Origin: Botryllus schlosseri
Lineage: Eukaryota
DNA length: 64,000 nucleotides
Assembly (NCBI GenBank): GCA_051294905.1
Contig: CM119384.1
Coordinates: 5,146,001-5,210,000 of the forward strand
Direction of reading: 5' to 3'
Shown: piece after piece, positions 1,411 through 15,139 of the stretch
Layout of the letters: each line of letters begins with the position of its first letter
Numbering within the stretch: position 1 is the stretch's first letter
Notes under the pieces: generated by a model
Seen by the model: the letters and a program-made list of their open reading frames with translations, nothing else
Told to the model about the DNA's origin: nothing
Databases searched by the model: none
Program-made: the position numbers and the translations under genes

Positions 1411-1753
1411 TTACAGCTTAGCTGCGGTGTAAATAGCTTTGGTGTTGCTATCACAAGTGTCCGTCATAGATTGAAAACACCACAAGGTTGCAATACAACG
1501 ATCGAATCTCATAGCAACAACTACAAGGCTAGTCCGCTAGTTAGTTAGGAGTAGTGAAGTGGAATATAATCGTCAAGTTGAAAATATCGATCGTGGAGAG
1601 GGAGTGATATTTGAAAAACCACAACTTCGCCGTTCCTCTCAGCAAGCCGAGGAACAGTTGATTTTTGTAGCATTTGGATGGCAGGGGTATTCCCCTTGTG
1701 TGAGCTTTCATTCGCTGTTGCAATATTTATTTTACTGAATGGTCGGTTCCGTA

Positions 1754-1761
1754 GCGGAAGT
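1754..1761 (+). promoter_or_regulatory. ETS/GABP-like site GCGGAAGT about 80 bp upstream of the proposed start codon at 1841
   Basis: Exact motif match and position only; no functional evidence. Confidence 0.25.
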
Positions 1762-1840
1762 AGAAGGAGTACCGCGGTGAAAATCGATGCATGTTTTGGC
1801 GCGTCTGGAATATTTCGAAGACGATTCTGCGAATAATCGA

Positions 1841-3420
1841 ATGGGTTCTATTGAACAAGAATTGGACGACATAGGAACGGAATGGGAAGTAATTCATGAC
1901 GACTCTCCCATCCAATATCGTTACGTTGTCAAATTTTGCAGGGAGGAGTTATCAGTTACTGCTAGAATTCCAGGTACGGCTGCTGCTGTTGTAGCTGCTT
2001 TTATTGCCGAGTTGATTGCTTTTTACGATTACCTCTTATCTAGTATCAAATGTACATCACGAATTCCAAGTTGTAGTTCCTTCTTCGTTTTATTTGCTTT
2101 TTTATCAAATCAAAATAATAGAAGATCACGATAATATGAATACATAGGATCGTCTCGGAACGACATGGAGTAGTCTCTTAATCAGACCAGAGTGGTCATG
2201 TCTGCACACAGTGCACTGTGCACTTGTACAGGCTCGGTGTGCAGGATACAGACAGCTTAGTGCGGAATATATTGTTCATAGAGAACTTTCAGTTAGAAGT
2301 TAAGATTTGGAATTTGTTTTGAGTTGGCAGTTTTGCGAATGGATACAGCTGACAAGTGACATAGAACAAGAAGGGGAGATTGTCAGGATTATCAACAGGG
2401 GCATTTCCATCAAAGAGGGCAACAAAGCTTTAAAACAGAGGAAGAGTAATCACTGATTAGTCATCACCAACCATCAGCATCCCAAGATAAAAAGAGGAAA
2501 CTAGTACACAGTATAAAAGTCATGACCATTCTTCAGAAGTCGGAAATTTCCAGGATGACACAGATGAAGTTGGAGCAATAGACAAGGATCTTGGAGCAAC
2601 ACCAAAAGTTAGTCAGTATGTAATACTTGAGTATAAGAGAGAGTTTTTTTCAGGGTCTTGTAGAGAGTGTGGGGATGAGAAAGGTGCAGAAGTCAGCTTG
2701 GTGCAGAATTCACTGACATGCAAAAGGAAAACATTGCAACTGGTCAATTCAAAACGACTAAATATTTTTTATTGGGTGCATACTAAACAGATAATATCTG
2801 ACCCAGACTTAGTGAACGCTCGTAGTAGTTACACAGTGAATTAACTCAAATAATATTGGCATTGACCTACTTTTTCTGATTGATTTGTGTGATTTTGTTG
2901 ATGTTTTTTGAAAGACCGTAGAGGGTCAAAGTCACCTTCTCAACTTATGTGATTGTCGTATGTGTAAATATGTTTTAACAGAGTAAAAATGGTGATCAGC
3001 TAAAGTCACACGGGTGACATTAACCACCTCATGAAAATTATAATTAAAAATGATTAAAAGCATAAAAATGTATTAGTTTCATGTTTGATCCGTAGCCAAA
3101 ATAATTCTTTCAATGAAATAAGAGATAAAATCATGCCATATAGAATTATTCAGCATTGCATTGGAAAGTTGGTACAAAGTCTGTCTTTGGTGCAGTATCT
3201 GACTATCTGTTGTTGCACTGGTATCCCTTTTAAAAGATTCAAACGTTTAAAACTTTTAGAGAATTATCCAGATGATCCACCAGCATTCGAGTTTGTAGAA
3301 GGCAAAAAAGGGGACATACACGAAGAAATGGAAAGAAAGATACTTTTAAGAATCAACGAGATCCTCATTCGATCGCAAGGCCAACCTATGTTAATGAGAA
3401 GCATTTTGGATGCAATATGG
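1841..3420 (+). CDS. RWD domain (exon 1 and start of exon 2 of the fusion gene)
   Basis: Spliced sequence MGSIEQELDDIG...EELSVTARIP|ENYPDDPPAFEFVEG...SQGQPMLMRSILDAIW shows the RWD YPxxxP motif and the C-terminal G-x-PM helix. Confidence 0.7.
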
Positions 3421-6400
3421 AGTCATTCACATATAACCCCGATAGAACCTACGCCAGGAGACGTCATGAATACAAAAAGGCTTCCAACACGAAAAAAGAA
3501 AAAAAGAGTCAAGTATCAACTAGCAGCGAATTTTGGTGGTTTACCGCCTGGTCTTTCTCTGGATCCAGGAAGACAAAAAGTCAAAAATAGCAAATCAACG
3601 GAGCAGGGTGAAGCCATAAAGGAGAAGCAGAAGTCTTCGTCAGGCGCAAAAGAACAGAAATTGCCACCAATGAAAACTGCTAAAGACGTTATCAACAGGT
3701 AAACTTCGATTGTTTCATTATCGTAACCTCATCAATATGAACTCAGAACAGTTAGTAGCACTTTCAAAATTTCTTGGATTCGCAGCATTTATTGACAATC
3801 AGCTTGGCAGCTTGATATGTCATGGAAAATTAATACCAGATGTTAAACCGAAATTATATTTCATCTGACTGTCCAATTGTTCATGTTTAATGTCTATACA
3901 AATACAATACAATCCTCTTTGCAGGGTATTTAGTAGTTGCGTGCAACCACGACTTCTCGTAAACAAAATTACATCATGTAGCGTCAAATCACTGTGTAGA
4001 CTACCATTAAATAAAAGTATAGCTAGAATGATACACAGCACTCCATGATACTCTGATTATAGTGCTGAAAAATTTTACCCCACTTCTGATGAATCAGTCA
4101 ATAAGCAGGAAAATGGTGCTGTTGGTTTGTATTTGTGGTATGAGTCCAAGGAATCCGTGTGGCGACGTCCCATATGTTGATAATGTTGTCAATTTCACGC
4201 CGTTCATTGGGAACTCTATTCATAGATTGAAATGGGACGAGCAACTGAAGCATGAAGAATTCATAGTGGGATACGAAGATCGTTTTGATGGGATAAAGGA
4301 AGTTCCTGTGTGGGATCTTAACTGGGAAGATGACATCTCTGCCACGGGTCCCACCGACAAGTTGGCCATCCCCGAGCATCGCATAGAGCATTTCAAGTGG
4401 AATTCAATTCTGTTGTGGGAGAAAAGCACTAGGACAGATGATGTATTCGGGTCTACAGGAAGTCAGAAAACGGTCGTTGATGTCATTCGAAGGTATGGAC
4501 TTGCTAAACTGTCTACCTTGAATTACCGTACTTACTTTGCTGTTCAATTGAAGGCTAACATACAACCCGTGTGGGATCACATTGTAAATCATACTGTGAA
4601 GTGTGAACAAATGAAGTCAATCGTTTGCTCATTACCTTAAGGCCTTTGCTAGGAAACAATGCCCTTTTTATTGGCCAAAATCAGTGTAGCCCACATCTAA
4701 TACAGGGATAGTGTGTAATATGTCCTCATAAATGCGAGCTCTCACTTGTACTTGTACAGGAAAGTAGTTGTATGATAAGCCAGCTTTGGGGGCTCAATCT
4801 TAGATTGAATGAAAAATATCAATCTATTATAATTTATATCTGTAATGATTAAATCAATAAATGTATTTGGTCTGAATACAGTCTATTTCTAAACTGATAT
4901 AGAATTGGAAAATGTTAATATCAATGATAGGACCATCCTACCGTCTAAATTTAATGTATTAATAAAACCCGATTCAAGCGTTTTTGCTGTTCCTTAGTTT
5001 GATTGCAACAGTATACATACCTTAACCCTTGACGTGTCACAAAACAATTCAGATATAAATCCAAGCACTCTTCGGAATCTGGTGGTAACAATGAGAGTAC
5101 TGAAAACCTCGGAAAGGACAAAAACGAAAGTTGTCAGAAAATCCCGTTGGTCTCCGGGGAGGTGCAAAATGTACCAAATGCCACGAAAGATTTTTCCAAC
5201 ATCTCATTGAATGAATGTAAAGGTGAGTTGAGCCAATGGTAATACTAGGTACTAGTGTCAATATTATAGACCAGTGCTTCCCAACTGTCTATTTAGGTGG
5301 ATTGAGAAGAATCTCTAAATGTTAGTTTTTTATTCCATTTGCGAAATATGCCAAACGCATTATCTTCTCACGATTAGACAGGCAAATACCCGTTTGTCTT
5401 TGCCCATAAGTGCCGTAAGCCACGCTCCTGTGCTTACAATAACTCATGAGCCAGATTTTCATGACAGTGATTTTGATGGGACCGTGAAATTGGAAACGGT
5501 AGTGTGTTTTTGAGTATATGTCTTAAATTGGAAATCAGTAGCAATGGCTTTGCGAACGGTCATTGGAAAATGCAATCCTGCCCGATTATAATCAGTAAAC
5601 AATTGCCGCGACACAAGCTATGCTCGGGACCTCTTTGTGCTCGAAGTAAAATACAAATTACTGCTTGAATACACTCTTTCCTGTTTGTAATCATATATTA
5701 TGTGTATTCTTGTCTGCTTGATAGGCTTGTGGGCGTCGCATGTGACTTGTTACTCACACGACTAATTCTACGTCAAATTATGTGCTCATTCGTTCATATC
5801 TAATGGTAGGCCGCACAATATGCTGACGCATTTGGTATTTTCTCACCCTGCTTTCTCAAAATATACCACTGGAGAAGCCACTTCTATCAGCAGATTGCCA
5901 ATGAAGCTCCTAACTTCATTCCTAACGGGATCATCAAATGCTTATATTGATTTACTTTTGTCGTATAGGTGAATTTACTGGCAGCGGAATTCAAAAAAAG
6001 TATGATAACGAACAACCCGTGACACAAGATCACGGCTTTGTTAAATCATCAAATGTGGAAAAGCAAAATCAAGTCCAAACATTTAATGAGAGCGATAAAA
6101 TATCGAGTGTGAAAGCAGTCCTCGCTAGTGACAGTGTTGGACTTGGTGACAGAAAAGACAGTCCATCAGATATCAAACACAAATTGGAGTCTTCAAATCT
6201 GGCAAGCACTACTTTTGATGATATTCAAGGGTAGGGTATTTCCTAGTGCTGTTAATCATACAAAAACTTTAGACTCGAGAAACTTTTCAGGCGTGGACCC
6301 ACGAACTTATCGGAATCTGATGCAAAGGTCGGGTCAACTCCGCAAGAAACTATCGAGACTCCAAGAAATGAGAATTCTCAAGAAGTCCAGCTGGCCAATG

Positions 6401-9400
6401 TGGTCGTGCAAGGCGTTCCAAATAATCTTCAAGATTTTGGTGATAGCTCAGTAAAGGAATCGGAAGAAATCAAAGGTATGTTCAAAGCTATATCACTTCA
6501 ATACGGTGGTGCAGTGAGTCACAATAATCCAGTGATTCCTAGGGTTGTAAGCAAGTCACAAGGTTCCGAGTCACAAGTTATTCATACTTTTATAGTTTTG
6601 ACTCGAGTCAAGTCGAATCATTTACAATTCACCACCAAGTCAAGTCCGAGTCATAGTGTTGTGACTCGAGAACAAGTCATTGTGTTCACTGCTCAGTTTC
6701 GCGTTCAAGCATGTTCAATCCACTTTTTTTCAATTCTGTTCGAGGGATATAAAATGACACGCATTTATAAGATCTTAATTTTCCTCAGTCCTCACAGTTT
6801 CTGGCCCTATTTTCCAAGTAGCAAGACTGATAGACGAAATACCTATAACATGGTGACTTTACTATTATTCTAAGTTACAATGAAATGTTTGGGTTGGCCG
6901 TCCTATTCTCGAGTCATATGACTTGCATGACTCGAGTACAAGTCGAGTCAAAACAAAAATTGACTCGAGTCGGACGCATTTCAAAAAATGACTCGGGTCA
7001 TGTCGAGTCACCAAAAAATCGTGACTCGAGTAGGACTCAAGTCAAGTCATGATTCGAGTCATTGCAACCCTGGTGATTCCAACCCTTTGACAATCTGTGA
7101 CCCAGTTTCAGCGTGGATGGACAACATTTGCCGTAAGTAGCATACACTGATAATTTTCTGGCATGCGCCGGGAAAACGTCTGGTAATTTAAGAACTTTTT
7201 GACTAAAAAGTAGTCTATTAGGGTTGCTACAACCTTGCGTCTTCAAAAAGCAATGACAAGTAAGGCTCTATATGATATTGCTACTATTTGAAATCACGCC
7301 GAGGTCACCAGGTGAAAACTGTAGGTGTAGCACTGAACCTTTTTCTAATTAAAATATTCGGTTGTTCATCGATGGAACTACTTGTGACTTGGGTTAATTT
7401 TTCTACGTTAATCTGTCCAAAACATAGCGGAATAAGTGTCACAATATCTTACAGGTGACCATGGCGGCATGACTATTCCAAACGAGACCGAACAACACCC
7501 TGAACACGACGGTGACTTTGTCAAGTCTTCCTGTGCGAGAGAACAAAATTCCGTTCCAAAAATCAATGAAATTGATAAAGACACAAGAGTGGATCCTGCC
7601 TTTGCGGACGACAGTGCCGGTCCTGCCGATAAAATGGACAATTCTACCAATAACGAGCACAGCTTGGAATGTTCAAATAAGGATTCATTCGGCCAAATCA
7701 AATGTGTCATGGAAGACATTCTTGAGGGGGAAGGTAACTGGAATATCAGAATAAGTAGCATATCTAAACCTCTTTGAGCCCTTACTGGCTGTTCCATGCC
7801 GCTCGAAGATGCCAATGGATACCGCTTCAAAGATTTGTGTGGCCTCTGCCGCAATACCTTACTTCCTTTGCCCATAACTTGTGTTTTGATATCCAATTCA
7901 ATTTCAACTTGCAGGTAATGACGATGGAGTGGTGTTTGGAGGCTGTATGTCCGACGACTTGTTTGAGCATGGGAGTTCGGAAAAGAAAAGTCCAGGTAGG
8001 TTAGGTGTACAATAGTTTCCTGTCTAGCTACCGTTTTTTTACGGCATGTATATTGTTAACAGGTGGTCAGCATTTTCGGTCTAGTAGAGGTAGAAGTTGT
8101 GCCGTAAATGTCTATACAAATACAAGTAGAAGTATCAATTTCAACTGTATGACACTTCAAACTGGAGTAGAAAATGAGGGGTCAGAATCTGAATTATTCG
8201 ATAGTTAAGGAGTCTCGTAGCAGTTAATCAGGGGTGGTTACTGTTGAAATGGCAACATTGGTCTTCCTGATTAATACAAAAGGACTAATGACACTACAAG
8301 TGTGTGCAATCTTCGAAAATATATTCAGTTACTGTGATACATGGTCTATTTCACGTGGCTCTTACTTTCTAATTTTCGAAATTAAAGCTGTAAAAAACTG
8401 CTCAAGTAGAAGTAGAAGTCGTCTCAAAACATTAAGTTGTGCAAACATACATGATCTATATGATATCTGATATTTTTCTAGAAATTAATTCTTGCCTTGA
8501 TTGCGTAAACAGAATACGGCCGTCAACCATGTTATTCGCTTTTCTATTCATTTCAAACCGTCTTTCTGTGCAAACTTGACGGTTGGCTTCTCGCAGGTGA
8601 GAGAAATTACTCGAAAGAAAAGTCGCGTAGAAAGGATCGCCGTCAAGATTTTTCCCACCCGTACGGTAGCCGCCGGAATGGTGGACGTGATGATGCTCGT
8701 TCACAAAGGAGACGACGAGAACCGTCACAAAACAATGAAGATCATCGATGTGCCAGCAAGACTTATGGGGATGAGTCACAAGGTATGAAATAAACCTGAA
8801 CTTTTGCAATATGAAGATATTCTTCAGTTGTATATTAAAATTCTGTACCTTCAGTATTGGCTATAATTAATTACGTTATATTTGGATTGTGCCTACAGCA
8901 AATAATTATCATTGTTGCGATATGTTTCAATACATCCGGTGTCCCTATATTCTATCGCTGAACCGCCGTAGCTCCCTGTGTTAACTCAAAGCGAGCATTA
9001 CAGAAAATGATTCTCAGCATTTTCAATGCACCTATGGAGTGCAGTGCCCTTTTAAGGAATTAGTATGCTCAGTTTACAGTATTATATTCCCTCAACTTAA
9101 CGAAATCCCAGGGATTTTCACTCTTGTGATTTACGAATTGTGTTTTTAGTGTTGCCGCGTGAATATCAATACTGCATTGTCGCTGATATCGAAGGGCACC
9201 AATTAAGAGAATTGCAGAATTTGCAAAGACAACTGGTCCACGGTCGAAAACACAGTGCCAGGTTACGGAAGGAGGATTTTTTATTCGTCAATATCGCATC
9301 AATAGCTTTTGACAATTTTGAGGAGAGACGTGTTTTGGAGAAGGTATTGGATATTCTACACACGATAATAACCTACGTTTTCTTTTGAAAGAAGTCTTGA

Positions 9401-12400
9401 TGTGTATTCTCGAATTTCCAGGCCCTGGTGCAAGTTTGTAAAGAAATGAAGCCTTTTCTATCGAACACAGGCCGTGTAGAATTCCGGAAACGCAAACTTA
9501 CCGTGCCGTTGTTTGCCGAACCGTTTAGAGACTTGGCCAAAAAACTCCGCCAGCGAATCCCTTCAGATGGTATGTATGTGACATATTTCGACAATATAAC
9601 TACCGACTGCCTATTAGGCATCTATATGCTGTCCGAGATAAGAACCTTTAGTATTGCATCGAACAGAGATGGTCAAAGTGGTCATTGTTAGTATTCAAGT
9701 GGAATTCAGTGGAATTAGTATTCAAGCTGTAAATTTCTATTCAATTACAAGTAGGGATTTGAAGAGCTACTTGGAGGTACAGAACTTCAACATACAATTG
9801 AATAGTGTATTCAGATTGAAGTAAATCCAAATATTTTCGGCTGACACTCGTCAGGGGTAATCATCAGCAGCTGGTAGAGAATCGGAAAGAACATTGTATA
9901 TTAACAATAGCATCAAAAATATGACGTCACCTGCATGAAATTTCGAAAATGATGATATGAAAATTAGTAAAATTTGTGGTTTCAAGCAGGGATTTTCTAG
10001 AACTTCTAGAAGTTTCTAGATATCCCTGATTTCAAGAAGTAGATTTGGTCAACACGTCACACACTTTTAATAGCCAGTCCAAGGTTGCTACTTTCGAAAT
10101 TGCTGGATGTATCTTCATGGCTGACAAAAAGGACGAATAACATAACAAATCAATGCAATTTTCAAACATGTATTCCTTTACCGTGATACGGGCTATTTCA
10201 TCCAGTTATGATAATGTCAACGATACACGTGATTGAAACCTGTCCCAAAACTACTTTCTAAATGTACTTTCGACTTTACAAAGTCCAGAGTAGTTTTAGA
10301 AGTGGAAGTAGTCAAAAAGTACAACCACTTGAGTAAGTAGTTCAAGTAGTAGTTTTTAGATTTGCTAAAATTTGTTCAAATTACGGAATAATTTTGTGAC
10401 TTTATGTAGATGCACATTGCACATGCACTTTCAGGGATTGACCCTCGGTCGCATGCTAGATTTTTATGAAACGTATTTCATTTAGTTGACGTCACATTGC
10501 TACCTCATGTTCAACTGGTGAATGTTTCGGGCGACACGAGAGGTTTGGAATCCCAGAAAATGCCATCGCCAAAGTTGCGATGTCCTATTCATTTCATGTA
10601 CTTGTGGGATCTCAATGGCCCAGATAATCAACCCATTGACTATGTTGAGCTTGGAGATGGAAACGATCGTTTGTGGCAAGAAGGTTTGTGGCGGATTTAC
10701 ATTTGCGATTTGAAAACATGCTAGAGATCGTTCGAATAGTTACTTGCCACTCGTCGCATGATGAGATTGATGTCACTGTACGGCCGGATTATCCGAGACA
10801 TGTTTATTTGGTTCGGTAGTACCTTATGCGCACAATCCACTTTCCCCGTCATTTGCTAGAATTTTACTAAATATTTTTGAGTTAACTAATTTTGTGCACA
10901 GGAGAGTCAATTTATTGGCAAGTCTGTGTACCAAGTTTTCATGTAAATTGTGTCTACTTTCTTTTTGTGTGCTAGTGCGTTGTTTTACTTGTTCAACAAC
11001 ATTGAGGACTAATATGTATATTTATCAATCTTATTTAAATTGCAGAGTTCAAATCCTATCATGATTCAAGACAGACATATGGGTAAGTGTAGCAGATATA
11101 AATCAGTAATTCAAATGTAGTTAACCATTGGCTTACGGAATAAGATATTTTTCTTCTCAAGATCCATTAAAACAGTTATAACTTCACCTGTAGGGTAGGG
11201 CCCTTCGTAAAATGACAGCCATATTTACTTTTGCCCTAGCTAGTAGCTAGTTGCTATGTTATCTACCCTATTATGATATATAATGAACTTGAATACATTC
11301 CTTGGTATTTTCACCTTATTGTCCATCCCTGAGCCATAACATTCGAGTGTTAAGAGACTTCGAGAACGTTCTCACTGTAATATTTTAAGGCGTGGAATGC
11401 GTAAAGATTCCAAATGGGAAGTTACTGTAAGCAAAAAGCTGTCTGGCATCTTGAGGCACAACAATATGGGCTTTCATATCGATCAGGGTAAGTGTGATAC
11501 ACCAAATGTATGCATGGCAAACACCGACATGTCTTCTGCAACGTTTCTAATGTTCATCACAGATGGGTACATCGAAGTCAATTCACTGTTGAGTCATCAA
11601 TTTTTCCGACATAGCAATGTCACAGAGGAGGATATTGAAATGATAGTGAAGAATAACGCAAAGAAAAGGTTCGTCCTTGAGGGCGAACCTGGGAAATACA
11701 AAATACGGGCTACGCAGGGTCACACTGTGAAGGTAGAATGAGTTGTAACGGTGTGGTCTAGTTCATTAAAATATTTCTTTCAATTTCAAAAGGGGGTTGA
11801 TCTGCAGCTACGTCAAATCCAGGATGCCGAAGAATTTCCTAACGTGATCCATGGCACGATCACCAAAAATCTTGATGGCATAATGGACAATGGTTTATGC
11901 AGGATGAAGGTATGACGTAACGGTTGTTTTACTGAAAAATATTTGAGGGAAAAAGATGCATGAAATTGTATTTCCTGAATTTTCCCGAACTAGACAAAAG
12001 ATTCACGAGTCTCGATTTCACGGAATGCTTTGAATCTAGCTATGGCATTTCACTAAACATCAACTGCAGTCGATATATTGACAATGTATGACCAATTTGA
12101 GCATCCGTATTTCAATTCAGATGTTATTTTCTCAGAGAAATCACATTCACATGACGACAGGGTTGCCGCGTGAAGAATCAGTCGTCAGCGGCATGAGGAA
12201 TTCCAGCAATTGCTTCATTTACGTGGATTTGAAGAAAGCCATGGAAGGTAATCGGGATTGTAACCAGGTCACAAGTAGGGATGATGACCAAATGAATCAA
12301 CTGTAGCAATCTGATGCTATGATAATCCCATAGAATCAATATCTTTGTCGCTTTACCAACAATTTCCACAAGGACTTGTTACCGACAATGTATTCGGCTT

Positions 12401-14624
12401 CTGGCTATCACTACATTGATATTGAACGGAGTGTAAAACGGGTTTCTATACTTGCTACCGATATTATCACATAAACAAGTTGTCCGGTAGCCAACACCCC
12501 AATCGCACGGATTTGGTTTTTATGCTACAATAATCATTAAATCAAGATGGATCCCATACGCCTGCTATATTTTTCACATTAGACAACGATATATTTTTCA
12601 TTGATTGGTTGGGTGAGCATCATTCACTGACTACCTACATGTAGTGTATTTCGTTCCTGATGTTGTGATTGCGGGTCAAGCTCACAGCAGGAGAGTCACT
12701 AAATATTCACAAACGGAAAGCTGGATATTTCAAGCAAACTTATGTAACAAAGCAAGTCAAATTTTTGAGCTTGGCAAGAGGCATGCTCGTTTAGTTTTGA
12801 TTCTTTTATGCTGCCAGCGCCATGCGTAGAGTGGCCCAAAGTTGAAATGCAAAGAATATCAATCGAAAATATAATGTGAAAAATTGTAATATATAAACAA
12901 AGGCTCACAGTGCGGAACCTACCAAGGTTCGTTGGTGAACGAGAACCTCTAAATTTCTGAAGTACAAATATGAAATGGCGTATGGCCTGCAAAACAGTCT
13001 TCTGACTCAGCCTGGTCTGGTATGTTTAGGCTTAGCTGATTTGGGATAAGTGAAATAGTAGCAATTTACAATTGAATTTTTTGACAAACTATATTCGATT
13101 ATCTGTAAATGTTTTGCGCTACATGCGATTAGCCTCATTACGTTATTTGGATATAAACACCAGTTTTTATTGATAAATCCATAACCAATTCCTAATGAGT
13201 TCAGGGGCCTTGCAATGACTAGAAACCAGAGCTGATCAAGTGATCAGCAATGAAGTACTTCATTTTAGAGCTTCATTCCTATTCCCACTTGAAGTAAATT
13301 TGACATGTCTTGGAGAAAACTACTTCTAGTGATCGAGTAAAAGTTTATATCTTTACTTCTACTGTAGGCTTACCATAAAGAGGACACTTTTTCAGAAATT
13401 TGAGACTTGCAAAACCGGAGAAGAATTCTCAAAAACCGGTGAATTTTTCGCACTTTGTGATCGGTTGACTAAAAAAAAGGTCATGCTAGGTGGATGACTA
13501 GAAATTTTAAAAAAAGCCGTTTTTAACTTCGAAATATCCGCCGGAGCGTAACTTCTGTGCTCATTTACGGCATATTACTCGCAATTTGCTCTAAATCTGA
13601 CCTAAATATTCCAAAGAGAGGACAAAATCTCAAAAAAGAGGACAAATCCTCTTAAAAGAGGACGTATGGTAACCCTATTCTACTGTAGTACCAACGCTGA
13701 ATAATTTGACCGCCTCTGCTAGAAGCTTGGTGCGGTTTCATGGGTTATATATTTTCAGCTCGTGGGTCGAATAGGCTGCACGCTACTGCTATAGACCGTG
13801 TCTTTGGTTACTCACCACAGTAGTTACGGTGCTTTCAGTGAAGTTAGGGTGTGTGGATCGTAACGGACCTGAAGCCGGCCCATTTAAGGATGTGATGTAA
13901 CTCTAATGCATACATCAACTGTCTTCCTTGCATTGTGGCTCAATTGTGTTGTCTTCATTTGACAACGCAGCTCGTCATTTGAAATTATGACTCTGATGCT
14001 GCCTTCAACATTCGTTTGCTGACAGGCTTACAGACCCACACTTCATCTTGCGATACGTAATTTGGTTGTGGAAATTCAATGAGAGAATTCTTTTACAGAC
14101 GGAATAGAGTTTTATGTCTCCGAGAATGGTGTGATATTGTCAGAAGGCCGCGACGGAGTCCTGCATCCGAAGTACTTCAAAAAAGTCGTAAACAGGGTCG
14201 GAGGAACTGGTCAGTTTATTTCATTATGTTGTTGCATCACTGCACTGTTTGGTTTCTTATATGCCATCCTGAATTTATGTTTTGGTGGAATCTTATGAAT
14301 AGGGCTGGGGGCAATGATTCCAAATCAAAACGATTAGTGTGCTATAAGAGTGAATTTGTCATCAACGTCTACTGATCTTGATCTGAAGTACTGTCACGTG
14401 CAGTATGAAATTGTCATCTGCCAACTTCTCCCAAAAATATATTGAACTCCGTGTCATTTGCTGAGGATTGTATTAGTACATGTTCGTTTGATCATGTCTA
14501 CAGTTTCTGCTGTACATTTGTGTTGTGGCGTGATGGCTAGACCATCTTTCTACAATAATCAAAACATTCGCTTTAATTTTGTGCAGACCGTGAAATACCG
14601 ATCAAAGGAAGAGAGAAGCTATGA
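1841..14624 (+). CDS. Multi-exon RNA-end-processing fusion protein, ~1074 aa: RWD + MJ1316/DUF504 + low-complexity linker + degenerate 2H phosphoesterase (LENG9/AKAP7-like) + Tpt1/KptA (TRPT1)
   Basis: Exons: 1841-1973, 3260-3698, 4226-4492, 5053-5222, 5969-6230, 6291-6475, 7455-7733, 7915-7995, (optional 27-nt 8063-8089), 8597-8782, 9150-9343, 9422-9569, 10486-10683 (or 10668), 11046-11082, 11390-11487, 11563-11732, 11793-11909, 12136-12247, 14099-14209, 14587-14624. All introns are GT..AG, all junctions are phase-matched, and the total of 3225 nt is open to TGA at 14622-14624. AATAAA at 15084. The last exon is the least certain. Confidence 0.75.
3670..4492 (+). CDS. LENG9: MJ1316/DUF504 RNA-repair-associated domain (LENG9-like)
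   Basis: Spliced MKTAKDVINR|LKWDEQLKHEEFIVGYEDRFDGIKEV...LAIPEHRIEHFKWNSILLWEKSTRTDDVFGS matches the DUF504 pattern (A.DVI.RI.WD, F.VGY.DRF.G..E, IP.HRI..F, WD/E+..R.D.VFGS). The symbol indicates domain similarity only; orthology is not established. Confidence 0.88.
6540..7072. mobile_element. Non-autonomous hAT MITE, 533 bp, with many GACTCGAGTC subterminal palindromes
   Basis: TIRs TAGGGTTGTAA / TTGCAACCCTG. Identical 8-bp TSD GTGATTCC at 6532-6539 and 7073-7080. Confidence 0.92.
9150..10660 (+). CDS. 2H phosphoesterase-like fold (AKAP7/LENG9 type) with degenerate catalytic motifs; three exons of the fusion gene
   Basis: YQYCIVADIEGHQLRELQNLQRQLV...EDFLFVNIASIAFDNFEERRVLEK|ALVQVCKEMKPFL...FRDLAKKLRQRIPSD|VDVTLLPHVQLVNVS follows the AKAP7-like layout. 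Motif 1 reads F-V-N and motif 2 reads H-V-Q instead of H-x-T/S. Recognised by eye only. Confidence 0.55.
9740..9965 (-). repeat. Interspersed repeat family A copy containing a minimal hammerhead-like core (9825-9858, minus strand)
   Basis: Reverse complement reads ACCC-CTGACGA-G-TGTCAGC-C-GAAA-ATAT-T-T-GGAT. About 220 bp align by eye with 47660-47860 and 51630-51770. Confidence 0.7.
10270..10380. repeat. Repeat family B (AGTAGAAGT/ACTTGAGTA-rich, MITE-like). Related copies near 8080-8220, 8395-8430, 22465-22560, 24030-24170, 27275-27510, 34530-34790 and 50810-50945
   Basis: Shared AGTAGAAGT, CCACTTGAGTAAGT and GATTTGC motifs. The copies at 22465 and 27275 begin TAGAGGTGGT. Boundaries are approximate. 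Confidence 0.55.
11390..14209 (+). CDS. TRPT1: Tpt1/KptA NAD-dependent RNA 2'-phosphotransferase domain (six exons), C-terminal module of the fusion gene
   Basis: Spliced SKKLSGILRH...GFHIDQ|DGYIEV...NAKKRF...KIRATQGHTVK|GVDL...VIHGT...GLCRMK|RNHIHM...SGMR...FIYVDLKKAME|DGIEFYVSENGVILSEG.DGVLHPKYF. All Tpt1 signature motifs are present (RH, KxRF, RAxQGH, HGT, RxHIH, SxNGVIL). Confidence 0.95.
12320..12975. mobile_element. Internal fragment of the hAT-type element found complete at 59064-60029
   Basis: Long colinear similarity to about 59300-59990, with shared strings such as GAGTGTAAAACGGGTTTCTATA, GAGAGTCACTAAATATTCACAAACGGAAAGCTGGATATTTC and AACCTACCAAGGTTC. TIRs are missing. Confidence 0.85.
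13365..13677. mobile_element. Non-autonomous hAT MITE, 313 bp, with AAGAGGACA subterminal repeats
   Basis: TIRs TAGGCTTACCATA / TATGGTAACCCTA. Identical 8-bp TSD TTCTACTG at 13357-13364 and 13678-13685. Related ends at 56830-56947 and probably 50180-50643. Confidence 0.9.
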
Positions 14625-15139
14625 ATATTCAAATCATCAGTTGTGAAAGGCTTCATTGCCACTGTATGTTACCTGATCAATGTCACAAATTTCTTTTGAC
14701 TATCGTTACCAATATATTTGTTACCTGCATTGTGCAGACAGGCACACAGTAAGTAGTCCAGTGGTTGCAGGCTGTTTTTCAAGCGGAAAAGCATATAGCC
14801 AGAAACATTGACACCAAAACATGTAGATATTTTCAATGGTTTATCTGACAAGCAGCTAACCTGAGATGTTTCTGACCTAGGCCGAGTCCAGTGATTCCCA
14901 AACTTTCTATGAGCATACCACCTAGTTAAATCGACAACAACCAAAATCAGTTTCAAACAAACCAAGATTTGGATAGAATGTGTTCAAATTGTGGCAAGGT
15001 TTGATGATTAACAACCGATACTGCAATATCGCGCTAAGCGCTTGAAAATGTTCAGGTATCTGATATAATCGTTGTTATAATATAATAAAAGTATATGTGT
15101 TGCACCATTGGGTCATTGCTACATTAAAGATTCTCAGTT

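What the first reader, a model, noticed from the sequence alone, without database searches (positions are those of the whole stretch)
1841..14624. One gene appears to fuse RWD + MJ1316/DUF504 + 2H-fold + Tpt1/TRPT1 into a ~1070-aa RNA-end-processing protein
Seen: 19 GT-AG exons splice in matching phase with no stop from the RWD start (1841) through a complete Tpt1 domain. The key bridge is a 37-nt exon (11046-11082, TTGCAG/GTAAGT, phase 1 to 2) that joins the 2H-like exon in frame to the acceptor just before the Tpt1 coding sequence. Known: vertebrate LENG9 (CCCH, DUF504, 2H) and TRPT1 are separate genes. Tpt1 removes 2'-phosphates left by fungal/plant-type RNA ligation and produces ADP-ribose 1''-2'' cyclic phosphate, which 2H-family CPDases such as yeast Cpd1 hydrolyse. 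MJ1316 has been predicted to recognise cyclic-phosphate RNA ends. Animals ligate tRNA with RtcB, so the role of animal TRPT1 is unclear. Inference: this is a Rosetta-stone fusion placing LENG9-like proteins and TRPT1 in one pathway, with RWD possibly linking it to ubiquitin or ribosome quality control. I do not know of this architecture being described, but could not search.
Basis: partly seen in the sequence, partly recalled or inferred. Interest (0 to 1): 0.92.

Follow-up and report, generated by a model that had tools for sequence, protein, structure and literature searches.

The report
Ascidian LENG9–TRPT1 fused RNA-repair gene
This sea-squirt gene really does join a LENG9-type RNA-end-binding protein to the RNA 2'-phosphate-removing enzyme TRPT1 in one transcript; other sea squirts share the fusion, so it links two poorly understood animal proteins, but it is not unique to this genome.

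Summary
Nineteen GT-AG exons (1841-14624, + strand) join in phase into a 3225-nt ORF of 1074 aa. The two key junctions, 10683/11046 and 11082/11390, appear in spliced contigs of two RNA runs from different studies and in raw RNA-seq reads. Intron 12, which carries the read-through stop, is almost uncovered.

Domains found:
- MJ1316 and Tpt1: clear Pfam matches; the Tpt1 R-H-R-R tetrad and HGT motif are intact.
- RWD: below threshold, but orthology supports it.
- "2H" segment: a very divergent 2H homologue (hhalign P 4e-5; 0 of 200 shuffles reach its score). It has lost the motif-1 histidine and both threonines, so it is probably not a phosphodiesterase here.

The architecture is not unique. 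Phallusia, Clavelina, Ciona and Styela proteins carry MJ1316 + Tpt1, with a recognisable 2H domain in the first three. Databases list them as "uncharacterized" or "2'-phosphotransferase". The Tpt1 domains form one tunicate clade. Amphioxus LENG9 already has RWD. Sponge and jellyfish LENG9 modules are fused to tRNA-ligase-type kinase/CPD domains. I found no paper on the fusion.

Verdict: a real, lineage-wide fusion and a useful functional clue, less novel than proposed.

The parts
1841..1973 (+). Exon 1: start codon and N-terminal part of the RWD-like domain
   Evidence: ATG, donor CAG|gtacgg. The N-terminus aligns with the Styela clava orthologue from residue 1. An in-frame ATG 18 codons upstream (1787) is not matched by Styela.
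3260..3698 (+). Exon 2: rest of the RWD (YPDDPP motif, aa 47), basic RKKKKR cluster (aa 122, NLS-like), and the first residues of MJ1316 (PPMKTAKDVINR)
   Evidence: Pfam RWD 15.4 bits, E 0.021, below cut-off. Styela orthologue RWD 22.6 bits. Amphioxus LENG9 RWD 59 bits. Alignment.
4226..4492 (+). Exon 3: MJ1316 / DUF504 domain (RNA cyclic-phosphate-end recognition domain)
   Evidence: Pfam PF04457 64.5 bits, E 1.5e-17, cut-off 26.3. 657 library proteins with E<=0.001.
5053..8782 (+). Exons 4-9 (5053-5222, 5969-6230, 6291-6475, 7455-7733, 7915-7995, 8597-8782): about 380 aa of Ser/Glu/Asp/Asn/Lys-rich linker ending in an Arg-rich stretch
   Evidence: Open frames and GT-AG phases. Composition. 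No homologues found. Junctions not checked with reads. The X15 contig runs 212 nt upstream of exon 10, which fits exon 9 plus part of exon 8.
9150..10683 (+). Exons 10-12 (9150-9343, 9422-9569, 10486-10683): degenerate 2H-phosphoesterase-derived domain. Motif 1 is L-F-V-N (aa 712) and motif 2 is P-H-V-Q (aa 788).
   Evidence: No Pfam hit and no hit with a LENG9-2H HMM. hhalign local against a 74-sequence 2H alignment: probability 69%, P 4.4e-5, 144 collinear columns. 0 of 200 shuffles reach the score (33.4 against 13.5 +/- 2.7). Junctions seen in RNA contigs.
11046..11082 (+). Exon 13: 37-nt bridge exon that keeps the LENG9-like part and the Tpt1 part in one frame
   Evidence: Joints 10683/11046 and 11082/11390 in X1 and X15 contigs and in X23 reads. 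Both ATGs in the exon are out of frame with Tpt1 and open a 20-codon uORF; skipping the exon gives a stop at codon 861.
11390..14209 (+). Exons 14-18 (11390-11487, 11563-11732, 11793-11909, 12136-12247, 14099-14209): complete Tpt1/KptA RNA 2'-phosphotransferase domain
   Evidence: Pfam PF01885 on exon pieces: 54.3, 24.9 and 37.6 bits, covering profile positions 3-160 of 177. Aligned to yeast Tpt1 7yw4 with R71 and R138 conserved. LRH, KKRF, HGT, RNHIHM and SGMR motifs present. All junctions seen in RNA.
14587..14624 (+). Exon 19: last 12 codons and the TGA stop
   Evidence: Joint 14209/14587 in 18 X23 reads and in contigs.

Best explanation
This is one protein-coding gene of an ascidian: the tunicate orthologue of LENG9, with the RNA 2'-phosphotransferase TRPT1/Tpt1 fused to its C-terminus. 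Its 19-exon mRNA encodes a 1074-aa protein made of an RWD-like domain, a basic NLS-like cluster, MJ1316, about 380 aa of disordered linker, a degenerate 2H domain, and Tpt1. Shown here: the exons are spliced together in RNA; the Tpt1 active-site residues are intact; MJ1316 is intact; the fusion occurs in four other ascidian genera; and the Tpt1 domains form one tunicate clade, which points to a single old fusion. [quoted passage not shown] The N-terminal LENG9 part acts as the targeting module. In this reading MJ1316, and the catalytically dead 2H remnant as a possible ligand-binding shell, hold RNAs with 2',3'-cyclic-phosphate or 2'-phosphate ends, and RWD docks the protein on a partner. In the ancestral tunicate protein, and still in Ciona and Clavelina where both H-x-T motifs survive, the 2H domain could also act as a cyclic phosphodiesterase. 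It could work either upstream (RNA>p to 2'-P) or downstream (breakdown of ADP-ribose cyclic phosphate). In this genome and in Styela that step has been lost.
For: Exon chain and ORF. Spliced RNA across the bridge exon in three runs, with no coverage of the read-through intron. The same RNA runs hold the upstream exons. Pfam MJ1316 and PTS_2-RNA. Tpt1 catalytic residues against yeast Tpt1; motifs; the tetrad and HGT motif are defined in PMC12810181. Fused orthologues: Phallusia P0009, Clavelina P0155 and Ciona P0157 with MJ1316+AKAP7_NLS+PTS_2-RNA, and Styela P0158 with RWD+MJ1316+PTS_2-RNA. The window protein aligns to Styela over aa 1-346 (39% identity) and over aa 596-1066 (36.5%), running without a break from the upstream part into the Tpt1 domain. 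Tpt1 tree: window+Styela 100/99, tunicate clade 99/95. 2H homology and motif loss. LENG9 modules fused to kinase/tRNA_lig_CPD/HAD_SAK/R3H in Oscarella and Sanderia. MJ1316 described as recognising 2',3'-cyclic ends and as fused to RNA-repair domains: PMC6514570.
Against: No single read or contig was shown to span exon 1 to exon 19; only exons (8/9)10-18 lie on one contig, and Logan contigs are not proof of one molecule. In X23 the depth rises from about 1-2 on exons 10-12 to about 18-21 on exons 16-18, so shorter Tpt1-containing isoforms may exist; Ciona has an annotated 440-aa isoform, P0156. Ascidians use spliced-leader trans-splicing and operons (background knowledge), and I could not look for leader-carrying reads at the exon 13 and 14 acceptors. 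No activity or binding has been measured for any of these proteins. The 2H assignment rests on one profile comparison at 69% probability. The S. pombe Tpt1-Yae1 case shows that Tpt1 can be fused to a functionally unrelated partner.
Confidence: 0.8

Rival explanations
1. Two adjacent genes, perhaps an ascidian operon: a LENG9-like gene ending near 10.7 kb and a separate TRPT1 whose mRNA begins at the exon 13 or 14 acceptor (by spliced-leader trans-splicing) and is translated from the Met in exon 14. On this view the cis-spliced 12-13-14 form is a minor read-through product.
For: Higher read depth on the Tpt1 exons than on exons 10-12 in X23. An in-frame ATG lies 3 codons into exon 14.
Against: Junction reads for 12>13 (4) and 13>14 (2) are as many as for 14>15 (2) and 15>16 (3). 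Intron 12, which carries the alternative stop, is essentially uncovered. The exon 13 ATGs are out of frame and would impose an overlapping uORF if exon 13 were a 5' UTR. The exon-14 Met is not conserved in Styela, Ciona, Phallusia or Clavelina. Those four genera have the same in-frame fusion.
Confidence: 0.08
2. The fusion is real but says nothing about function. LENG9 and TRPT1 happened to be neighbours and merged in the compact tunicate genome, and the two halves work in unrelated processes, like Tpt1-Yae1 in fission yeast.
For: S. pombe Tpt1-Yae1: both domains are essential but need not be linked, and their pathways are unrelated (PMC12810181). The fusion was found only in tunicates: of the 150 best MJ1316 representatives only one carries Tpt1, and long non-tunicate Tpt1 proteins lack MJ1316 and 2H. 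A long disordered linker lies between MJ1316 and the 2H domain, and the 2H active site has decayed in two lineages.
Against: All the partner domains belong to RNA-end chemistry: the cyclic-phosphate-end reader, the cyclic phosphodiesterase fold and the 2'-phosphotransferase. The LENG9 module is separately fused, in a sponge and a jellyfish, to the kinase/CPD healing domains of the ligation pathway that creates Tpt1's substrate. The fusion has persisted across deeply diverged ascidian lineages.
Confidence: 0.25
3. The segment encoded by exons 10-12 is not 2H-derived at all but a lineage-specific spacer, and the positional match to the 2H domains of other ascidians is coincidental.
For: No Pfam hit. 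No hit with a LENG9-2H HMM even with filters off. No BLAST similarity to the equivalent Styela segment. Catalytic motifs absent.
Against: hhalign aligns 144 columns collinearly over nearly the whole domain, P 4.4e-5, score 33.4 against a shuffle maximum of 24.9. The remnants of the motifs fall exactly on motif 1 and motif 2. The segment sits between MJ1316 and Tpt1 as in Ciona, Clavelina and Phallusia. Styela shows an intermediate state (13.7 bits).
Confidence: 0.15

Closest known systems
Ascidian fused proteins: Styela clava LOC120328512 isoform X1 (914 aa), Ciona intestinalis LOC100175594 isoform X2 (757 aa), Phallusia mammillata A0A6F9DFL6 / CAB3260711.1 (714 aa), and a Clavelina lepadiformis unnamed protein (1066 aa)
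   Same: Same domain order: MJ1316, then a 2H or 2H remnant, then Tpt1, with RWD in Styela. The window protein is collinear with Styela across the junction. The Tpt1 domains form one clade.
   Different: Only 36-39% identity to the best full-length match, and 58% within the Tpt1 domain. The linker is longer. The 2H catalytic motifs are lost, as in Styela; they are partly kept in Phallusia and intact in Ciona and Clavelina.
LENG9 (leukocyte receptor cluster member 9) of vertebrates and amphioxus
   Same: MJ1316 followed by an AKAP7-type 2H domain. Amphioxus LENG9 also starts with RWD.
   Different: Vertebrate and amphioxus LENG9 have a CCCH zinc finger and end after the 2H domain. Here there is no CCCH, the 2H domain is degenerate, and Tpt1 is appended.
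TRPT1 / Tpt1 / KptA RNA 2'-phosphotransferases (yeast Tpt1 7yw4; human TRPT1)
   Same: Full-length PF01885 domain with the Arg-His-Arg-Arg tetrad and the HGT motif.
   Different: Stand-alone proteins of about 180-250 aa in most organisms. Here it is the C-terminal fifth of a 1074-aa protein.
Schizosaccharomyces Tpt1-Yae1 fusion (PMC12810181)
   Same: A lineage-restricted Tpt1 fusion protein.
   Different: There the partner is an FeS-assembly adaptor at the C-terminus, unrelated to RNA ends. Here the partner is N-terminal and made of RNA-end-related domains.
Sponge and cnidarian LENG9-module multidomain proteins (Oscarella lobularis XP_065834305.1; Sanderia malayensis EP00794_P008777), of the 'Swiss army knife' RNA-repair type
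   Same: The CCCH+MJ1316+2H module is fused to further RNA-repair enzymes.
   Different: The partners are a P-loop kinase, tRNA_lig_CPD, HAD_SAK_1 and R3H, not Tpt1.
Yeast Cpd1 and the Trl1 CPD domain (2H cyclic phosphodiesterases)
   Same: The same superfamily as the LENG9 2H domain. These are the enzymes acting next to Tpt1 in the fungal tRNA-ligation pathway (established knowledge; PMC5434554).
   Different: The window's 2H segment lacks the motif-1 histidine and both Ser/Thr residues, so equivalent catalysis is unlikely.

Membership tests
Tpt1/KptA RNA 2'-phosphotransferase (PF01885) | Significant match to the family profile over the whole domain | tested here: met
   Exon pieces score 54.3, 24.9 and 37.6 bits (cut-off 26), plus 14 bits for exon 14, together covering profile positions 3-160 of 177. 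phmmer to the Phallusia domain gives E 4.9e-54.
Tpt1/KptA RNA 2'-phosphotransferase (PF01885) | Catalytic Arg-His-Arg-Arg tetrad and the HGT NAD+ motif | tested here: met
   KKRF aligns to yeast R71 and RNHIHM to yeast R138. ILRH at aa 880 and HGT at aa 969 are conserved with the other ascidians. The tetrad and HGT are as defined in PMC12810181.
Tpt1/KptA RNA 2'-phosphotransferase (PF01885) | NAD+-dependent removal of RNA 2'-phosphate | not testable with these tools
   Needs an enzyme assay or yeast tpt1-delta complementation.
MJ1316 / DUF504 (PF04457) | Profile match above the curated cut-off | tested here: met
   64.5 bits against a cut-off of 26.3 for exon 3 alone. The missing first 11 profile positions are supplied by the end of exon 2 (PPMKTAKDVINR).
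MJ1316 / DUF504 (PF04457) | Binding of RNA 2',3'-cyclic phosphate ends | not testable with these tools
   For the family itself I found this function only as a statement in PMC6514570 and in the Pfam family name.
2H phosphoesterase superfamily (AKAP7_NLS PF10469 / LigT) | Two H-x-T/S-x catalytic motifs | tested here: not met
   Motif 1 is F-V-N-I and motif 2 is H-V-Q-L in alignments with LENG9 and ascidian 2H domains.
2H phosphoesterase superfamily (AKAP7_NLS PF10469 / LigT) | Detectable homology to the family profile | tested here: inconclusive
   No Pfam or hmmsearch hit. hhalign gives probability 69%, P 4.4e-5, z about 7 against 200 shuffles. I read this as a divergent homologue, not an active member.
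2H phosphoesterase superfamily (AKAP7_NLS PF10469 / LigT) | Two-lobed 2H fold | not tested
   The segment spans three exons, so no single reference exists to hand to the structure predictor.
RWD domain (PF05773) | Profile match and the YPxxxP motif | tested here: inconclusive
   The exon 2 piece scores 15.4 bits (cut-off 22.8) on profile positions 60-103, and exon 1 alone gives no hit. The YPDDPP motif is present. The Styela orthologue scores 22.6 bits. Amphioxus LENG9 scores 59 bits.
LENG9 orthologue group | CCCH zinc finger + MJ1316 + 2H architecture | tested here: not met
   MJ1316 and a 2H remnant are present in the right order. No CCCH match appears in exon 2, and no Cys/His pattern between RWD and MJ1316. 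I treat it as a derived orthologue, not a typical member.
Tunicate LENG9-TRPT1 fusion (database-only group) | MJ1316 and Tpt1 in one polypeptide, collinear with the ascidian proteins | tested here: met

The most novel reading that the evidence does not exclude
The ascidian fusion reveals a partnership that holds in all animals. On this reading LENG9, whose function is unknown, is the RNA-end reader and healer that works with TRPT1, whose role is unexplained in animals that ligate tRNA with RtcB. Together they would form a second RNA repair or quality-control route acting on 2',3'-cyclic-phosphate and 2'-phosphate ends, possibly docked to the translation machinery through RWD.
Probability: 0.3. 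Interest if true: 0.8.

Novelty: new variant of a known kind. Interest (0 to 1): 0.6.

Why it matters
I found no functional study of LENG9. The role of Tpt1 in organisms without a fungal-type RNA ligase is described as obscure (PMC6573784). A fusion of the two that is transcribed and conserved across a whole subphylum gives a concrete, testable hypothesis: they act on the same RNA ends. It also offers tractable systems to test it, namely Ciona genetics and recombinant domains. The natural series helps too: both H-x-T motifs are intact in Ciona and Clavelina, one Thr is lost in Phallusia, and the motifs are largely gone in Styela and this genome. That series works as a built-in experiment on whether 2H catalysis is needed. 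The separate fusions of the LENG9 module to tRNA-ligase healing domains in a sponge and a jellyfish point the same way. The importance is limited because the architecture already sits in sequence databases for other ascidians, and because MJ1316 proteins were already proposed to be RNA-repair factors.

Tried and rejected
1. Finding this genome's own annotated protein failed. The representative search with exon 3 returned at best a 99-aa Logan fragment at 76% identity.
2. The search with the whole Styela protein was swamped by low-complexity words and returned only itself.
3. A sequence-only test of the 2H label gave nothing with Pfam on exon pieces, a custom LENG9-2H HMM, or BLAST/phmmer against Styela. 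Only hhalign with a shuffle control gave a signal.
4. I did not predict the structure of the RWD or 2H segments.
5. I could not read Burroughs & Aravind 2016 (NAR gkw722 / PMC5062991), the paper most likely to have listed MJ1316 fusions. It is not held, so I cannot exclude that it shows an MJ1316-KptA architecture.
6. Literature searches for LENG9+TRPT1, MJ1316, TRPT1+ascidian and DUF504/LENG9 found nothing on the fusion.
7. I looked for the fusion outside tunicates. Long Tpt1 proteins of oysters, a barnacle (probably a chimeric gene model joining PIG-L and poly(A)-polymerase domains), a dinoflagellate and others have no MJ1316 or 2H.
8. I rejected reading the depth gradient in X23 as proof of a separate TRPT1 mRNA. 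Counts are tiny, only 6% of the run was read, most reads are 95-99% identical and so are partly filtered, and junction counts fluctuate (4, 2, 2, 3, 13, 4, 18).

Full report
**Observation**

I rebuilt the proposed gene from the window. The 19 exons are:

| Exon | Coordinates |
|---|---|
| 1 | 1841-1973 |
| 2 | 3260-3698 |
| 3 | 4226-4492 |
| 4 | 5053-5222 |
| 5 | 5969-6230 |
| 6 | 6291-6475 |
| 7 | 7455-7733 |
| 8 | 7915-7995 |
| 9 | 8597-8782 |
| 10 | 9150-9343 |
| 11 | 9422-9569 |
| 12 | 10486-10683 |
| 13 | 11046-11082 |
| 14 | 11390-11487 |
| 15 | 11563-11732 |
| 16 | 11793-11909 |
| 17 | 12136-12247 |
| 18 | 14099-14209 |
| 19 | 14587-14624 |

All have AG acceptors and GT donors and join in phase. 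The result is a 3225-nt ORF of 1074 codons that ends at TGA 14622-14624. Leaving it out gives a stop at codon 861. Reading through the weak exon-12 donor (AAG|gtttgt) also gives a stop at codon 861, which is TAG 10722-10724.

**RNA evidence**

I laid four public runs of the same organism on 9140-15130.
- X1 and X15 come from different studies. Each holds a single spliced contig (1009 nt and 1316 nt) running exon 11 (X1) or exon 10 and upstream (X15) > 12 > 13 > 14 > 15 ... > 18.
- The joints 10683/11046 and 11082/11390 are present in both contigs.
- Raw paired reads of X23 show the same two joints (4 and 2 reads). That is about as often as the next two joints inside the Tpt1 part (2 and 3 reads).
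- Intron 12, which holds the read-through stop, has depth 0 (X23), 2.8 against about 82 (X1), and 0 (X15).
- X16 is collinear with the genome, so it is DNA.
- The same RNA runs hold 0.46 of the sampled words of 1700-8800, more than the exon share of 0.28. The upstream exons are therefore expressed, but I did not check their junctions.
- Depth in X23 rises towards the 3' end, from about 1-2 on exons 10-12 to about 18-21 on exons 16-18. Only 6% of the run was read, most reads are 95-99% identical, and junction counts fluctuate (4, 2, 2, 3, 13, 4, 18). I therefore draw no conclusion about extra short isoforms and do not exclude them.

**Domains**

- **MJ1316.** Pfam on exon pieces gives 64.5 bits for exon 3, E 1.5e-17.
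- **Tpt1.** PTS_2-RNA matches run across exons 14-17 (profile positions 3-160 of 177; best piece 54.3 bits). Against yeast Tpt1 (7yw4), KKRF aligns with R71 and RNHIHM with R138. LRH, HGT and SGMR are conserved with the other ascidians. The Arg-His-Arg-Arg tetrad and the HGT NAD+ motif, as defined in PMC12810181, are therefore intact.
- **RWD.** The match is sub-threshold (15.4 bits on exon 2; YPDDPP motif). The collinear Styela orthologue scores 22.6 bits, and amphioxus LENG9 has a clear RWD at 59 bits.
- **2H label.** This is the weakest label.
  - There is no Pfam hit, no hit with an HMM built from 70 LENG9 2H domains, and no BLAST similarity even to Styela's equivalent segment.
  - hhalign against a 74-sequence 2H alignment does give a collinear 144-column local alignment: probability 69%, P 4.4e-5, score 33.4. 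In 200 shuffles the score was 13.5 +/- 2.7 with a maximum of 24.9.
  - In that alignment and in a MAFFT alignment, motif 1 (L-H-x-T) reads L-F-V-N and motif 2 (P-H-x-T) reads P-H-V-Q.
  - Styela has L-N-V-N and P-H-V-K. Phallusia has L-H-V-N and P-H-L-T. Ciona and Clavelina keep both H-x-T motifs.
  - I conclude that this is a 2H-derived domain that has lost its phosphodiesterase site in the Styela/window lineage.
- **Linker and other features.** Exons 4-9 encode about 380 aa of Ser/Glu/Asp/Asn/Lys-rich linker with no homologues. No CCCH finger is present.

**Relatives**

- I searched 1.84 billion representatives with exon 3. Of the 150 best MJ1316 proteins only one, P0009 of Phallusia mammillata, also has a Tpt1 domain.
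- Word-based searches with ascidian Tpt1 domains found more:
  - Clavelina lepadiformis, 1066 aa;
  - Ciona intestinalis LOC100175594, 757 aa, plus a 440-aa isoform;
  - Styela clava LOC120328512, 914 aa.
- Pfam confirms MJ1316 + AKAP7_NLS + PTS_2-RNA in Phallusia, Clavelina and Ciona, and RWD + MJ1316 + PTS_2-RNA in Styela.
- The window protein aligns with Styela over aa 1-346 (39% identity). It also aligns over aa 596-1066 (36.5%), continuously from the upstream part into the Tpt1 domain.
- In a maximum-likelihood tree of Tpt1 domains, the window pairs with Styela (100/99). All ascidian sequences, plus two metagenomic fragments, form one clade (99/95). This fits a single old fusion.
The Styela affinity agrees with that.
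- Long Tpt1 proteins outside tunicates (oysters, barnacle, dinoflagellate, chytrid) have no MJ1316 or 2H.
- The databases name the ascidian proteins "uncharacterized protein" or "2'-phosphotransferase".

**The LENG9 side**

- Vertebrate LENG9 is CCCH + MJ1316 + 2H.
- Branchiostoma LENG9 is RWD + CCCH + MJ1316 + 2H. RWD is therefore an old LENG9 feature, retained here, and not a new addition.
- In Oscarella (a sponge), Sanderia (a jellyfish) and several unnamed assemblies, the CCCH + MJ1316 + 2H module continues into further domains: a P-loop kinase (AAA_33), the fungal tRNA-ligase CPD domain, HAD_SAK_1 ("Swiss army knife RNA repair") and R3H.
- That is a second, independent type of fusion. It ties the LENG9 module to the healing enzymes of the 5'-phosphate ligation pathway, the pathway whose product carries the 2'-phosphate that Tpt1 removes. 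A yeast-type pathway has been reported in HeLa extracts and in the lancelet (PMC5434554).

**Mechanism**

Shown: there is one transcript, the Tpt1 site is intact, MJ1316 is intact, the 2H site is degenerate, and the fusion is lineage-wide.

Inferred:
- The Tpt1 domain performs the standard NAD+-dependent 2'-phosphate transfer.
- The LENG9 part recruits it to RNAs with cyclic-phosphate or 2'-phosphate ends. MJ1316 is described as a reader of 2',3'-cyclic ends (PMC6514570).
- RWD provides a protein-docking surface.
- The basic RKKKKR cluster suggests nuclear import.

So does the alternative that 2H opens RNA>p to a 2'-phosphate. Neither can be assumed for this genome's protein. Human Tpt1 is poor at removing terminal 2'-phosphates (PMC6573784), so the substrate may be an internal 2'-phosphate.

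**Rivals**

| Rival | Probability | Main arguments |
|---|---|---|
| Two genes or an operon, with a trans-spliced TRPT1 mRNA | about 0.08 | Against: junction counts, the empty intron 12, out-of-frame ATGs in exon 13, the non-conserved Met in exon 14, and the conserved in-frame fusion |
| A real fusion that carries no functional information, like S. pombe Tpt1-Yae1 | about 0.25 | See Rival explanations |
| Exons 10-12 are not 2H-derived | about 0.15 | See Rival explanations |

**Novelty and score**

I found no paper on the fusion or on LENG9 function. I could not read Burroughs & Aravind 2016, the paper most likely to have drawn MJ1316 architectures. The architecture is already in public protein databases for four other ascidian genera. 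The general idea that MJ1316 proteins are RNA-repair factors is published.

I rate this a new variant of a known kind, with interest 0.6. It is a solid, transcribed, conserved fusion that makes the unexplained roles of LENG9 and animal TRPT1 testable. It is neither unique to this genome nor as complete a pathway as proposed, because its 2H site is dead.

Noticed in passing
window 9740-10139, 12340-12939, 13340-13739 (introns 11 and 17): Very high-copy dispersed repeats. In the DNA run X16 the summed word depth is 2e5-7e5 against about 129 for single-copy sequence, and these stretches are also abundant in the RNA runs, with many loose ends at 13377, 13630 and 13677. Family not identified.
   Followed up: no
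window 6540-7080 (intron 6): A cluster of the palindromic motif GACTCGAG / CTCGAGTC: 5 of the 7 copies of GACTCGAG in the whole window lie in this intron. It looks like a small inverted-repeat element or MITE.
   Followed up: partly
P0064/P0193 (Oscarella lobularis), P0073 (Sanderia malayensis), P0015, P0128 (unnamed assemblies): Proteins of 1400-1640 aa joining CCCH + MJ1316 + 2H (a LENG9 module) to AAA_33 kinase, tRNA_lig_CPD, HAD_SAK_1 and R3H. These are early-animal 'Swiss army knife' RNA-repair proteins built on LENG9.
   Followed up: partly
P0040 / P0191 (Branchiostoma lanceolatum LENG9): Amphioxus LENG9 carries a full RWD domain (59 bits) in front of CCCH + MJ1316 + 2H. Pfam did not detect RWD in the two vertebrate LENG9 proteins checked.
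   Followed up: partly
P0168-P0173 (Crassostrea gigas, C. virginica and Logan contigs): Oyster Tpt1 proteins are 704-760 aa, with the Tpt1 domain at about 160-365 and a C-terminal extension of about 400 aa with no Pfam match.
   Followed up: no
P0164 (Saccoglossus kowalevskii, 408 aa): This protein has one complete and one partial Tpt1 domain in tandem (6-195 and 264-385).
   Followed up: no
window 1787: An in-frame ATG lies 18 codons upstream of the proposed start at 1841. The Styela orthologue starts at the position matching 1841.
   Followed up: partly
window 11441, 11639, 11861, 11888-11891, 12210: Exonic single-base differences between the reference and the X23 RNA reads, and the DNA run X16. 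They look like strain or allele polymorphism, not editing. Ascidian populations are highly polymorphic (background knowledge).
   Followed up: no
same genome, another piece (note s1-231971): Another reader noted a Tpt1-like domain inside a retroelement-like Pol elsewhere in this genome. I did not examine it, and its relation to this gene's Tpt1 domain is unknown.
   Followed up: no
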